A stretch of 64,000 nt of DNA, taken from positions 186,001 to 250,000 of the forward strand of contig CDMY01000603.1 in NCBI GenBank assembly GCA_001179505.1, given 5' to 3'. The stretch comes from Vitrella brassicaformis CCMP3155 (taxonomy: Eukaryota; Protista; Chromerida). The notes under the pieces are model-generated. The model did no database searches and was not told where the DNA came from. It worked only from the letters and a program-made list of their open reading frames with translations. Numbering within the stretch: the first letter of the stretch is position 1; every line of letters begins with the position of its first letter. Both the position numbers and the translations under genes were made by a program. This document shows, piece after piece, positions 15,757 to 19,911 of the stretch.

Positions 15757-17796
15757 TCAATCAAGAGCCCGCAGATATGCCATGCAATCCCTCTCCCGCC
15801 GTCTCGTCTCATCCCGCCTCTCTGCCGCCTCCCACGCACTCGAGACGCCCATCACCACCCACTCGGGCAAATCGGCACTGAAGTCATCCCGCTCTTCGTA
15901 TTTCACCACAGTCAGAGCTCTGAGCTTTTCTTCGGCCCTCGACCGCCACCACCCCCTGCCCCTCCCCCTCGTGGCCGCCAGCCGTTTCATGTCGCGGTGT
16001 GAGTGCGGGGCGGTGAGGGATGCGGGCGGGGGAAGGGGTATGCCGAGTGGCGGTACTGCACCAATGTCTCTCTGATGGGGGATGCATGGCCCACCCGTGT
16101 GGTCCATCTGCCGCCTCTCAGGGTCAGCGGTGAGGGCTGGCGACGATGAGGCCGCAGACAGCTGAGCGGTTTCCTTGGGCTCCTCTGCCGCTTCTTCCAT
16201 CACATGGCGGGGGGGCATGCGGATGAAATCCTCCAGCGACATAATCGGAGCCTCACCCTCATCGGCCGATGATGCCGGCTGCGCCTCAATAGCCCTCCTC
16301 TCCTCGTCCGACGGCAACTCAACAGCAGCAGCAGCAGCAGCAGCGATAGACTCCGACGGCTGAGCCACTTCTGACCCTCGACGGTCCTCTCCCTCAACCA
16401 TAGGCACAGCAGATGGCAGGCCCGGTGCTGGTGCTGGCTCAGCGGTCTTATCGGCAGCTTGCTGGTCCTCGGAGCTCTTCCCCTCAGCAGCAGCGGGTGG
16501 GTGCGACACGGCCGCATGAGCACCGCCCCCAGCAGATGGCGAGCCAGGCACACGCGCAATGGGCGGCCGGACCTGCCGCAATGGCGGCAGAAAAGACAGC
16601 ATTGTCTTGTCGTCAACAGACCTTGCCGATCGCGAGCCGAGCTCGTCGGCTTCATGTTCCTGCTGCTGCTGCTTGCGTGAGGGAGGCAGCACCGGCAGGG
16701 AGGGTGTTGGGCTGCCTGGCGCGTGTGGGTGTGGCGGCAGAACGAGAGGGGGCTGCTGCTGCTGCTGCTGCTGTGTCTGGGGCTGTGGTTGCGTTGAAGG
16801 GGAGGAAGGGAAGGACGGAAAAGGGATAACTGTGGTGGCGGTGATGGAGGTGGGGCAGCTGGGCGAGGCAGGCACCGACGCACCCCGCCCTGCAGCACCG
16901 GGCTGGGCACTGGCAGTGGCCATCCACGAGCCAAAGAACGATGACACCACGGGGCTCTGAAAGACACAGACAGACAGACAGACAGACAGACAACACATTC
17001 TTGGCCATTCATTTGCCGCGTCCTGTGTCCTCACCACCAGTGTCTGCGGGGGGGTTGGTAGTGTCGGCATTGTCGGCAATGTCGGCAAGCTCAGCCGCCG
17101 GAATGCTGCAGCAGTGCGGGAGGGCGCCAGCAGCCAATCGGGTATCTCCCCAAGACCGATAGAGTGGATGAACTCGTTGGCGAAGTGACACGAGTTGCGG
17201 TCGACTGCGTCGTAGGAGTCGGCTCTCCAGTCGCTTGCCATCCGCCTGAGAATGAACTTTATCTCCTCCTCGCTGCGACGGGTGAACCCCTGACACCCAA
17301 CACAGCACAGCACAACAACCGTGCCAGCCAGAGTGATGCTGCTTCACTTCACTTCACTCTGCCCTTTGCTCTCTCACCATTTCGATTCGCTGCCTGTGTG
17401 TGAAGCCCTGCTTTGGGCCGCCGGGATTCCAGCTCACAGCGATGCCTACAGAGGGATATTGACGAAAGTGAGCAGACGATAAGCGGCGAGATGACAAGCG
17501 AGTCCTCCATCAGCATATGACTGGCTGACCTGAGTCGTTGATGCAGCCTGGGCGGCTCTCGCTGCTGAAGTCCAGTTCCTTCTTGTAGACCTCCACGCCG
17601 CAGTGGTACACGCCTGCATGGCATGCAGACAGCACACGGAGACCTCCATGCACGCCTCTATAGAAGTGTCGAGGAAAACAGTGCTTTGGCAGTGGTTCGT
17701 TCTGTTACCCGTGCCGATTGCTCGCATGATCTGACCGATTGCAGGGTGTGCAGGGTCATACACGTGCACGTACACAGGACTCCCATGCTCATCCAT
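15757..17796 (-). CDS. PPPDE/DeSI-family peptidase-like protein with long low-complexity C-terminus
   Basis: Spliced motifs VYVHVYD, GVYHCGVEVY, HRQRIEMGFTRRSEEEIKFILRRMASDW, YDAVDRNSCHFANEF...IPDWL. Possible upstream start at 17937. Confidence 0.85.
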
Positions 17797-18028: not shown

Positions 18029-19911
18029 ATGGCATCGTCATTGTCCGTCACCGTGTCCGAGTGCAGCCTCTGCAAGGAGGAGTATGAGCCGTCGGGCAGC
18101 AAAGGGCCTCGGGTGCTCAGATGCGGTGAGTGCTCTCCAGCAAACGCCACACCACCTGTGCTGTGCTTTGCTGTGCTGTGTGTTGTCTGCTGCGTGTTTG
18201 GTCAGGCCATTCGTTCTGTGCTCAGGTAGTGAGTGACGCACACGCCGGGTGCCTAACCTGCCAGGCTGGGCTGCACGCATGGCTTGGATGTCATGTTTGC
18301 AATCAGTGCATCGTGGCGCTCATCAACCAACACCCTCATGGCCACCGCCAGGCCATCTGCCCCCTCTGCAAGTACGCTCACACACACAACACACACACAC
18401 ACACACACACAACACACATCTATCTAAAGCTGCTCTTTCTTGGGTGTGTGTGTGTGTGTGTGTTAGGGAGGTGACTGCGGAGGTGTGTGCGCGTGACAAC
18501 TATTTGGCGCGCGAGTGTGTGGAGCAGCAGTGGCAGCTGCGGGCGGCCTTGGAGCCGGATGCTCCCATGCCCCCGACCAAGGTCGTGTTCCGCGTCCGCC
18601 TCCCGACCGACTACTTCTACAGCCGCCGCCTCGGCAGACGCTGGGTGGAGCGTGTGCGGCTCGTGGGCAACCTCCCGACACTAGGTAGGTAGGTATATCT
18701 CGTTAGTACTAACGCCGCCCGTTGGAATGAATGAGTCAATGAATGATGCCACCCACAGGTTCGTGGGATCCTATGAAGGGCCTGGAGCTGACCACAAGTG
18801 ACGCCATGTGAGAGGAGCGTTGGCGGCGGTGGCTGTGTCACTCATAGTGTCTGTCTGTCTGTCTGTCGGTCGGTCGGTCGGTGTGTGCGTCAGGTATCCT
18901 GTGTGGCAGTCGCAGCCAATCAACGTGCCTCTTGGGGAGAAGGTGGAGTACAAGTACGTGACGGTCGACACCTGGTGTCGGCAGCTTCGCATCAAGTGGG
19001 AGGACCGCAAAGCCAACAGAGAACTCATCCCTTGGGGTACGCGAAGCCAAGCCGCGCCGTGTCAGACAGACGCGACACAGTGTCTGGTGTGCATCCGTCC
19101 ATCTGCACAGTTGAGGGCGGCAGTGTTGTTGGTAGCTTCGGCTACCGCGTGGTGCATGACGACCTGGGCAGCATGTGAGCCCCGACGGACACAACGCGGC
19201 TGCCTCATCTCACCATCCATGTGTGTGCCTGCGTCTGTCTGTCTGTCGCTCAGCCCCTCGGCACACGCCGCCTGCATCACCGACTGGCTGGGCGGCAGTG
19301 CACACCTCACTCTCCACTACTGGTACGGACGCACCACACACGTGGATGTGCCTTTCATCCACTGTGTGTGTGTGTGTGCGTGTGTGTGCGTGTGTGTGTG
19401 TGTGTGTATGTCAGCTCATCGCGTGACGGCAAGACGTACGACGATCTACTCCGCCACGTGGGCAGCAAGCACCGGGTGGTGTTGGTCATCAGCCACGGCG
19501 CACACCTCTTCGGGTGCTACGTCCATGAAGGCCTCCAGCCGCCCCAGAACTCCAGCAGCAAGCACAGCTACGCCAGTGTGGTGTGGTGGTTCTCCCTGGC
19601 CGGCGGCCACTTCGACACCCCCACCAAGGTGCTGGTCCAGGACACAAGAACGGGCCATGATAATGATGCCGATGCTGAGCGCAGTGCCGTCAGTGTGTGT
19701 GTGGCTGGTGACAAGTGCGTCCGGTGCGGCGACGGGGCGTGCGTGTCTATCGGATGGCTGTGTCTGGGGTGGGGGGGGCGCTGGCGGCACGTGTGAGGCC
19801 GACATCCGGCGCTGTTTTCAGTGCCCGCCGAAACGGTGCTGGGGCGACGCGGATGACTGGCGTGACGCCGTCTTCACGGCTGATGAAATTCAGGTTGTGG
19901 CGGTGCAGTAG
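18029..19911 (+). CDS. RING-HC E3 ligase - CBM20 starch-binding domain - TLDc domain protein (9 exons; 1-nt frameshift in a G run near the 3' end)
   Basis: Exons 18029-18125, 18206-18225, 18307-18371, 18467-18684, 18759-18807, 18894-19036, 19111-19174, 19254-19322, 19415-19911. RING: CSLC...CGHSFCAQC...CPLC. CBM20: VVFRV...LVGNLPTLGSWDP...LTTSDAMYPVW...VEYKYV...WE. TLDc: LHYCSSRDG...LFGCYV...FTADEIQV. Confidence 0.85.

What the first reader, a model, noticed from the sequence alone, without database searches (positions are those of the whole stretch)
18029..19911. RING + CBM20 + TLDc: a starch-granule-targeted E3 ligase resembling laforin-malin in one chain
Seen: a RING-HC domain (C-x2-C...PRVLRCGH..C..C...CPLC, the same layout as the malin/TRIM32-type RING), directly followed by a CBM20 with its conserved Trp residues (LGSWDP, YPVW, KWE), then TLDc. 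Established: in animals the RING ligase malin reaches glycogen through the CBM20 of laforin, and alveolates store amylopectin. Inference: a single-polypeptide ubiquitin ligase for storage-glucan metabolism, possibly linked to V-ATPase or oxidative stress through TLDc.
Basis: partly seen in the sequence, partly recalled or inferred. Interest (0 to 1): 0.75.

Follow-up and report, generated by a model that had tools for sequence, protein, structure and literature searches.

The report
Starch-binding RING ligase, broken TLDc tail
The alga Vitrella brassicaformis transcribes a gene that joins a ubiquitin-ligase RING finger to a starch-binding module, so it may tag proteins on starch granules, but its third domain (TLDc) is cut short by a real one-base frame break.

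Summary
Window 18029-19911(+) is a nine-exon gene of Vitrella brassicaformis (CEM25771.1). It encodes a C3HC4 RING of the TRIM23/TRIM32 type, a CBM20 and a TLDc domain. Pfam, AlphaFold models and structure searches support all three.

An MMETSP transcript ORF (368 aa) matches my nine-exon model exactly, so the RING and CBM20 exons lie on one mRNA. That ORF stops at 19796, not 19911. A one-base frame break in a G8 run (19771-19778) puts the last ~45 TLDc residues out of frame. The 362-aa database model hides this with a 133-nt intron that looks like an artefact. In 20 of 20 paralogs examined, this domain is one unbroken exon.

The gene belongs to a large TLDc expansion seen only in Vitrella (at least 139 loci), some with a RING. 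Only this member has a CBM20. No other RING+CBM20 protein appeared among the best hits from 1.84 billion sequences.

All site-1 glucan-binding residues are kept, so a starch-targeted E3 ligase is plausible but untested. The V-ATPase link is unsupported.

It is an analogue of laforin-malin, not a member. RNF213 already combines a RING and a CBM20. Earlier scan notes, which I did not verify, report other CBM20 fusions to ubiquitin-system genes elsewhere in this genome.

The parts
18029..18125 (+). Exon 1: start codon and first half of the RING (residues 1-32; C12, C15, C32)
   Evidence: Identical to the N-terminus of P0001 and P0165.
18206..18225 (+). Exon 2 (20 nt): RING residues G33-Q39, including H34 and C37
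   Evidence: GT-AG borders. The peptide HSFCAQ is present in P0165.
18307..18371 (+). Exon 3: end of the RING (C40, C57, C60, K61)
   Evidence: The Pfam RING models cover residues 11-61.
18467..18684 (+). Exon 4: helix after the RING (residues about 73-89), a linker, then the first strands of the CBM20 from about residue 98 (nt 18576)
   Evidence: AlphaFold models show helix 73-89 and strands 98-105 and 122-128.
18759..18807 (+). Exon 5: CBM20 segment with site-1 Trp W136 (LGSW motif; the L and part of the G codon lie in exon 4)
   Evidence: The 1ac0 alignment pairs W136 with glucoamylase W543.
18894..19036 (+). Exon 6: CBM20 core with W154, K170, W185, E186 and N191
   Evidence: This exon alone scores Pfam CBM_20 1.5e-4. 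Residue mapping.
19111..19174 (+). Exon 7: last CBM20 strand (residues about 209-215) and start of the TLDc region
   Evidence: Model strand 209-215. TLDc structure alignments begin at residues 208-216.
19254..19322 (+). Exon 8: N-terminal helix of the TLDc domain
   Evidence: Model helix 221-230.
19415..19796 (+). Exon 9 as transcribed: TLDc core from SSRDG onwards, ending at TGA 19794-19796 with the out-of-frame tail RWRHV
   Evidence: P0165 ends the same way. Pfam TLD 1.4e-3 on this exon alone. The family profile matches positions 66-174 of 239 here.
19771..19778 (+). G8 run where the reading frame departs from the family frame (one extra base, or two missing)
   Evidence: The transcript-derived ORF reads through it in the same frame as the genome.
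19777..19911 (+). Family-conserved end of the TLDc domain (DIRRCFQ ... FTADEIQVVAVQ, stop TAG 19909-19911), now in the +1 frame and not part of the transcript ORF
   Evidence: tblastn of paralog P0002. The paralog exons end the same way.
19689..19821 (+). The 133-nt 'intron' of database model CEM25771.1, probably an annotation artefact that restores the frame
   Evidence: It encodes family-conserved TLDc strands. It has a GTC donor, 133 nt and GC 0.68. The eight real introns have GTG/GTA donors, 74-95 nt and GC 0.46-0.62. It is retained in transcript ORF P0165. 20 of 20 paralogs have no intron here.

Best explanation
This is a transcribed Vitrella brassicaformis gene. It arose when a CBM20 starch-binding module was inserted between the RING-plus-helix and the TLDc domain of one member of a RING-TLDc family seen only in Vitrella.

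Shown:
- The RING has all eight zinc ligands and a TRIM-like fold, followed by a helix.
- The CBM20 has the canonical fold, all five site-1 residues and two of the three site-2 aromatic residues.
- The protein starts directly with the RING, with no N-terminal leader.
- The TLDc domain loses its last ~45 residues to a one-base frame break in a G8 run, seen in both genome and transcript.

Inferred:
- The protein is cytosolic, where chromerid starch lies.
- The CBM20 docks it on starch granules or soluble alpha-glucan.
- The RING recruits a charged E2 enzyme and ubiquitinates proteins held at the glucan surface. This works like laforin-malin but in one chain.
- The truncated TLDc, which in paralogs is probably the partner-binding end of the ligase, is likely crippled or dispensable now that the CBM20 does the targeting.
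For: - Exon model and transcript: (P0165 equals the nine-exon model; eight introns are spliced).
- RING: Pfam; PDB sequence hits TRIM23 2.2e-6 and TRIM32 2.4e-6; structure Z 8-10 to TRIM21, TRIM23, TRIM25 and TRIM32 RINGs.
- CBM20 family and fold: Pfam 5.9e-14; model pLDDT about 90; 58 Foldseek hits at E<=1e-3, all listed ones CBM20-bearing, including STBD1 8x8k (TM 0.79) and GPCPD1 2z0b.
- CBM20 residues: W136, K170, W185, E186 and N191 align with glucoamylase W543, K578, W590, E591 and N595. W120 and W154 align with Y527 and W563. These columns are invariant or nearly so in 27 CBM20s. That these glucoamylase positions form sites 1 and 2 is from my own knowledge of the glucoamylase structure work (Sorimachi et al. 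1997), not from a tool result.
- Family origin: the closest RING and TLDc relatives are the same Vitrella RING+TLDc paralogs.
- The CBM20 is 33-47% identical to the other Vitrella CBM20s, so the fusion is not recent.
- Vitrella stores cytosolic starch.
- Frame break.
Against: - No binding or ligase assay exists.
- No ortholog was found in any other organism, so selection cannot be measured.
- The frame break may mean the whole gene is decaying.
- Site-2 residue Y556 falls in a two-residue gap, and there is a ~9-residue loop insertion near the first strand.
- Transcript evidence is one assembled MMETSP ORF, apparently from the same strain.
Confidence: 0.55

Rival explanations
1. The gene is a decaying member of a fast-turnover family. 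It is a one-off domain shuffle that is still transcribed but is on its way to becoming a pseudogene, with no specific role at starch.
For: - The frame break removes conserved core strands of the TLDc, in both DNA and RNA.
- The family has at least 139 loci in tandem arrays.
- The gene exists in one species only.
- Several near-invariant family positions differ here (R to C at 242, L to V at 263), and there is a 13-residue insertion.
- Earlier scan notes, which I did not check, describe other frame-broken CBM20-ligase genes in this genome.
Against: - Nine exons with all canonical splice sites and no other lesion.
- The RING ligands and CBM20 binding residues are all intact although the gene is only ~45% identical to its paralogs and 33-47% to other CBM20s. 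That implies long retention before a recent break.
- The break lies 3' of both the RING and the CBM20, so a RING-CBM20 protein is still made.
Confidence: 0.25
2. A full three-domain protein is still made. This could happen by slippage at the G8 run (transcriptional or +1 ribosomal), or by the annotated 19689-19821 splice. The TLDc end would then couple the ligase to a partner such as the V-ATPase.
For: - The +1-frame tail stays open for 44 codons to a stop at exactly the family's position and still resembles paralogs.
- GC3 is highest in that frame, though weakly (0.73 against 0.70 and 0.53).
- The 19689-19821 piece has GT-AG ends and a length of 3n+1.
- TLDc domains of Oxr1, NCOA7 and mEAK7 bind the V-ATPase (PMC8608904; structures).
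Against: - The only transcript ORF on record keeps the 133 nt and the G8 run.
- The annotated splice would delete conserved strands.
- An open 44-codon frame is not rare at 60% GC.
- No slippage signal is known here.
- At least 139 TLDc paralogs cannot all be V-ATPase regulators.
Confidence: 0.08
3. The CBM20 recognises a glycan other than the cell's own starch. The expanded RING-TLDc family would then act as a defence or surveillance ligase set, as proposed for the CBM20 of RNF213.
For: - The family is lineage-specific, large and arranged in tandem arrays.
- RNF213 carries a CBM20 under positive selection (PMC11549300).
Against: - Site-1 residues are the canonical alpha-glucan set.
- The closest CBM20s sit on starch and trehalose enzymes, PP2C phosphatases and kinases of dinoflagellates and other algae.
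- Only one of the many family members has a CBM20.
Confidence: 0.07

Closest known systems
Laforin-malin complex (EPM2A CBM20-phosphatase plus NHLRC1 RING-NHL ligase) of vertebrates
   Same: A RING ligase is brought to an insoluble alpha-glucan through a CBM20. The RING is of the TRIM32-like sequence type. The animal model is reviewed in PMC6116066.
   Different: Here it is one chain instead of two. There are no NHL repeats and no dual-specificity phosphatase domain (Pfam). The third domain is a TLDc. It is not homologous as a system. No DSPc hit lies next to any CBM20 hit in this genome.
RNF213 (mysterin)
   Same: It is an E3 ligase that carries both a RING and a CBM20 domain in one polypeptide (PMC11549300).
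   Different: RNF213 is very much larger, with a dynein-like AAA core and an RZ finger that does the ligation on bacteria. Its CBM20 was found by structure, is under positive selection, and is proposed to sense pathogens. The Vitrella protein has 368 residues and a sequence-canonical starch-type CBM20.
Vitrella RING-TLDc paralogs (for example CEM02011.1, CEM34082.1, CEL98341.1)
   Same: Same RING (45-47% identity), the same helix after the RING, the same TLDc (40-50% identity), and the same exon start at SRDG.
   Different: The paralogs have a short linker where this gene has a ~120-residue CBM20. In the 20 paralog loci examined, the TLDc exon is unbroken.
TLDc proteins Oxr1, NCOA7, TBC1D24 and mEAK7
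   Same: The fold matches at Z 10.7-11.6 over 123-133 residues, and the conserved SxDG and FG motifs are kept.
   Different: Sequence identity is only 11-16%. The C-terminal strands are out of frame; by my reading they hold the counterparts of NCOA7 L926 and E938, which matter for folding and V-ATPase binding (PMC8608904), but I made no residue-level alignment to NCOA7. No V-ATPase evidence exists for this family.
TRIM ligases (TRIM23, TRIM32, TRIM21, TRIM25)
   Same: The RING fold plus a flanking helix. These are the best PDB matches.
   Different: No B-box or long coiled coil was detected, so it is not a tripartite-motif protein.

Membership tests
RING-HC (C3HC4) E3 ligase domain | Eight zinc ligands in C3HC4 order with canonical spacing | tested here: met
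   C12, C15, C32, H34, C37, C40, C57 and C60. Pfam zf-C3HC4 scores 32 bits against a cut-off of 21.
RING-HC (C3HC4) E3 ligase domain | Cross-brace RING fold | tested here: met
   Model pLDDT above 90. TRIM23 5vzv Z 9.6 with rmsd 1.5 over 71 residues; TRIM21 8a58 Z 10.1.
RING-HC (C3HC4) E3 ligase domain | E2-dependent ubiquitin transfer | not testable with these tools
   Only sequence hints: L14, P58 and K61 sit at the usual E2-contact and linchpin positions. This is my own knowledge, not a tool result.
CBM20 starch-binding module | Pfam PF00686 above the gathering score | tested here: met
   52.1 bits against 23.3, E 5.9e-14.
CBM20 starch-binding module | Beta-sandwich CBM20 fold | tested here: met
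   Model m607581194ce6 with pLDDT about 90. All 58 Foldseek hits at E<=1e-3 that are listed carry a CBM20; TM 0.70-0.79 to isolated CBM20 domains.
CBM20 starch-binding module | Site-1 residues (glucoamylase W543, K578, W590, E591, N595) | tested here: met
   W136, K170, W185, E186 and N191 align with them. W136 is invariant and K170 and W185 nearly invariant in 27 CBM20s.
CBM20 starch-binding module | Site-2 residues (Y527, Y556, W563) | tested here: inconclusive
   W120 and W154 align with Y527 and W563. Y556 falls in a two-residue gap, with Y151 nearby.
CBM20 starch-binding module | Binds alpha-glucan | not testable with these tools
   Needs a pull-down or calorimetry experiment.
TLDc domain | Pfam PF07534 above the gathering score | tested here: not met
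   24.1-24.2 bits against 24.5, covering only profile positions 27-84 of 170. In contrast, 54 of 57 relatives match at E<=1e-4.
TLDc domain | TLDc fold | tested here: met
   NCOA7 7obp Z 11.6 (125 of 165 residues aligned, rmsd 2.6); Oxr2 4acj Z 11.1.
TLDc domain | Complete domain including the C-terminal strands | tested here: not met
   The frame break at 19771-19778 puts the family's last ~45 residues out of frame.
Laforin-malin system | NHL repeats (malin) and a dual-specificity phosphatase domain (laforin) | tested here: not met
   Neither appears in the Pfam scans of P0001 or P0165.
TRIM (tripartite motif) family | B-box and coiled coil after the RING | tested here: not met
   No B-box hit. 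Only one 17-residue helix follows the RING.

The most novel reading that the evidence does not exclude
Vitrella runs a dedicated ubiquitin system on its cytosolic starch. This single-chain RING-CBM20 ligase would be one of its writers, evolved independently of the animal laforin-malin and HOIL-1 routes that prevent polyglucosan build-up. It might mark granule proteins, or even the glucan itself, for turnover or autophagy.
Probability: 0.2. Interest if true: 0.75.

Novelty: new variant of a known kind. Interest (0 to 1): 0.45.

Why it matters
Ubiquitin control of storage glucan is known mainly from human disease: Lafora disease through malin and laforin, and polyglucosan disease through HOIL-1 (PMC6116066, PMC9016349). 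If this protein is an independent, single-chain ligase that binds starch by itself, it shows that coupling ubiquitination to an insoluble glucan evolved more than once. It would also be a small, tractable model for a RING plus CBM20.

Two practical points follow:
- The public gene model CEM25771.1 hides a real frame break behind an invented intron.
- The gene points to a very large, undescribed TLDc expansion in Vitrella. That expansion matters for understanding TLDc domains beyond V-ATPase regulation.

Tried and rejected
I could not fetch the transcript contig, so the transcript evidence is its ORF only.
- Both metagenome scans gave nothing. The search for related loci returned no relative. 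A 22-mer from exon 9 hit one contig, L013, which shares only 26 nt and is a chance match.
- A mixed MAFFT alignment (A4) misplaced most CBM20-only rows. I replaced it with separate alignments A5 (TLDc) and A6 (CBM20) and made one model from each.
- The in-frame stops reported in about half of the paralog TLDc matches looked like mass pseudogenisation or recoding. They are simply the natural stop codons at the end of the exon.
- I looked for a laforin-type gene. No HCxxGxxR motif lies near 25 CBM20 loci, and no DSPc hit lies next to a CBM20 hit. This is inconclusive because the searches run exon by exon.
- I tried to confirm the earlier scan notes of other CBM20-RING genes. No PF13639 hit lies within 30 kb of a PF00686 hit. 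Long ORFs at CBM20 loci gave only a protein kinase and a GDSL/SGNH hydrolase as possible CBM20 partners; one further ORF, on the opposite strand to its CBM20 hit, is a mitochondrial carrier gene. The notes are neither confirmed nor refuted.
- The ESM Atlas search gave only CBM20 clusters, none with a RING.
- A paper search for Vitrella plus TLDc found nothing.
- I did not hand a self-joined spliced model to any search tool. Whole-protein searches used the database records P0001 and P0165, and exons were searched by reference.
- I did not build or search a frame-corrected, read-through protein. The two frames were compared separately.

Full report
**What is in the sequence**

The window is GC-rich eukaryotic DNA with short introns full of CA/GT and GTCT repeats. 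From the ATG at 18029 I derived nine exons joined by eight GT-AG introns of 74-95 nt: 18029-18125, 18206-18225, 18307-18371, 18467-18684, 18759-18807, 18894-19036, 19111-19174, 19254-19322, and 19415 onwards. Read this way, the frame stops at TGA 19794-19796, giving 368 codons.

Exon-by-exon Pfam scans by reference already gave CBM_20 on exon 6 (1.5e-4) and TLD on exon 9 (1.4e-3).

**Database records**

A word search anchored on exon 6 found the annotated protein P0001 (362 aa; CEM25771.1 / A0A0G4G9W8; Vitrella brassicaformis CCMP3155). This confirms the organism named in earlier scan notes.

Its cluster has a second member, P0165. This is a complete 368-aa ORF from MMETSP Transcript_7643 on a 1319-nt contig. 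P0165 is identical to P0001 for residues 1-333 and then continues exactly as my nine-exon model, ending in GWGGRWRHV.

I handed no self-joined model to any search tool. All whole-protein work used P0001 and P0165.

**The three domains**

RING:
- The ligands are C12, C15, C32, H34, C37, C40, C57 and C60, in C3HC4 spacing.
- Several Pfam RING models score 1e-7 to 4e-8.
- The closest solved sequences are TRIM23 (2.2e-6) and TRIM32 (2.4e-6).
- The model (pLDDT above 90) superposes on the TRIM21, TRIM23, TRIM25 and TRIM32 RINGs at Z 8-10. It includes a helix at residues 73-89, like the dimerisation helices of TRIM RINGs.

CBM20:
- Pfam gives 5.9e-14, 52 bits against a cut-off of 23.3.
- A model built on a CBM20-only alignment has pLDDT about 90 over residues 90-200. 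It hits the CBM20s of cyclodextrin glucanotransferases, glucoamylases, GPCPD1 and STBD1 (58 hits at E<=1e-3; TM 0.70-0.79 to isolated domains).
- In the HMMER alignment to Aspergillus glucoamylase 1ac0, W136, K170, W185, E186 and N191 pair with W543, K578, W590, E591 and N595 (site 1). W120 and W154 pair with Y527 and W563 (site 2). Y556 falls in a small gap. The assignment of these glucoamylase residues to sites 1 and 2 rests on my own knowledge of the glucoamylase structure work (Sorimachi et al. 1997).

TLDc:
- The Pfam score is just under the cut-off (24.1-24.2 against 24.5) and covers only profile positions 27-84 of 170.
- The region is 40-47% identical to Vitrella paralogs that pass the cut-off clearly.
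- Its model matches NCOA7, Oxr2, Skywalker, mEAK7 and Oxr1 TLDc domains at Z 10-11.6.

**The frame break**

Paralog alignments show that the 133 nt removed as an intron in P0001 (19689-19821) encode family-conserved strands (VAG..G...IG..L.LG). The family's C-terminal part (DIR.C.Q ... F.ADEIEVL) is present at 19777-19911, but in the +1 frame. The frames switch in a G8 run at 19771-19778.

Several points mark the supposed intron as atypical:
- It has a GTC donor, where all eight real introns have GTG or GTA.
- It is 133 nt long, against 74-95 nt.
- Its GC content is 0.68, against 0.46-0.62.

A family profile finds at least 139 TLDc loci in the genome. Nearly all cover the whole domain in one stretch of about 500 nt, whereas this gene matches only positions 66-174. 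In 20 of 20 paralog loci that I translated, the domain is a single unbroken exon from SRDG to the natural stop.

The transcript ORF carries the same break. Another MMETSP ORF is 100% identical to its genome counterpart, which suggests the same strain. The lesion is therefore seen in DNA and RNA data sets, but not in an independent strain. The annotated 362-aa model is most likely a gene-caller's repair.

The expressed product is thus RING, helix, CBM20 and about three quarters of a TLDc. By my reading of the family alignment (no residue-level alignment to NCOA7 was made), the lost part includes the counterparts of NCOA7 L926 and E938. Mutating those residues impairs folding and V-ATPase binding (PMC8608904).

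**Family context**

The exhaustive search of 1.84 billion representatives gave 746 hits at E<=1e-3. By local domain mapping, the best 150 hits other than the query's own record split as follows:
- 81 CBM20-only
- 45 TLDc-only
- 12 RING-only, plus one with the RING and the linker after it
- 12 RING+TLDc

Only this gene's own record has RING+CBM20. Pfam tallies agree:
- Among 57 TLDc relatives, the partner domains are RING and a Tc5/CENPB-type HTH (8 proteins each).
- Among 81 CBM20 relatives, the partners are PP2C, GT20/trehalose enzymes, kinases, amylases and others, but never a RING.

All 20 TLDc or RING relatives that I looked up are from Vitrella. The best CBM20 relatives come from dinoflagellates and other algae.

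The genome has at least 27 CBM20 matches. This gene's CBM20 is only 33-47% identical to them, so the fusion is old while the frame break is young.

**Mechanism**

The domain order, the intact RING ligands, the intact glucan-binding residues and the lack of an N-terminal leader are all shown. Vitrella's starch lies in the host cytosol (bioRxiv 10.64898/2026.09.25.754361).

The rest is inferred. The CBM20 would tether the ligase to starch or soluble glucan, where the RING would ubiquitinate nearby proteins. I give this 0.55. The main rival, at 0.25, is that the gene is simply decaying.

A link to the V-ATPase or oxidative stress has no support here. The TLDc is truncated, and it belongs to a family far too large for that single role.

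**Comparison with known systems**

The protein works like laforin-malin but is not a member, because it lacks NHL repeats and a phosphatase domain. RING plus CBM20 in one chain already exists in RNF213 (PMC11549300), although that is a giant AAA ligase with a structurally detected CBM20 of unknown ligand. HOIL-1 shows that ligases can even modify glucans directly (PMC9016349). That is the most adventurous reading here.

**Earlier scan notes**

Earlier notes report other CBM20 fusions to ubiquitin-system genes elsewhere in this genome: a tandem CBM20-like plus RING pair, a frame-broken CBM20-RING gene, a deubiquitinase-CBM20 gene, a decayed RBR-CBM20 gene, and CBM20 joined to an F-box-like protein. 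My crude co-location tests neither confirmed nor refuted them. If they hold, this gene is one more piece of a recurring theme. That raises interest in the theme and lowers the uniqueness of this single gene.

**Verdict**

I rate it a new variant of a known kind, of moderate interest.

Noticed in passing
G000 contigs C802, C217, C268, C718, C315 and others (for example L039-L058): Vitrella has a very large expansion of TLDc domains. The family profile scored 139 loci out of 651 first-look candidates, often in tandem arrays. In the 20 loci examined, the domain is one intron-free exon of about 500 nt. All 20 relatives that I looked up by source are from Vitrella only. I found no paper holding both 'Vitrella' and 'TLDc'.
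   Followed up: partly
Proteins P0011, P0012, P0013, P0046 (Vitrella; 665-2010 aa): Eight large relatives combine a Tc5-transposase / CENPB-type HTH DNA-binding domain with a C-terminal TLDc. Some exist as 2-4 identical copies according to UniRef. This hints that a transposon-derived gene helped spread the domain.
   Followed up: partly
window 15757-17796 (-): The upstream neighbour, on the opposite strand, encodes a PPPDE / Peptidase_C97 domain (31.8 bits against a cut-off of 29.2), a family of deSUMOylating or deubiquitinating peptidases. Its likely start codon, near 17796, lies only about 230 bp from the RING gene's ATG, so the two may share a promoter region.
   Followed up: partly
window 19689-19821: Public gene model CEM25771.1 (A0A0G4G9W8) contains an intron that seems invented to bridge a frame break. 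The MMETSP transcript ORF does not splice it out.
   Followed up: yes
L014 (G000:C324:104558-107833) and L025 (G000:C212:142713-144937): Other Vitrella CBM20 loci. At C324, one open frame carries a CBM20 followed by a protein kinase domain (221 bits). At C212, an open frame overlapping the CBM20 match carries a GDSL/SGNH hydrolase; this is the family that a 2026 preprint links to starch accumulation.
   Followed up: partly
window 18380-18460, 18860-18890, 19360-19410: The introns of this gene consist largely of CA/GT and GTCT/GTCG microsatellites.
   Followed up: no
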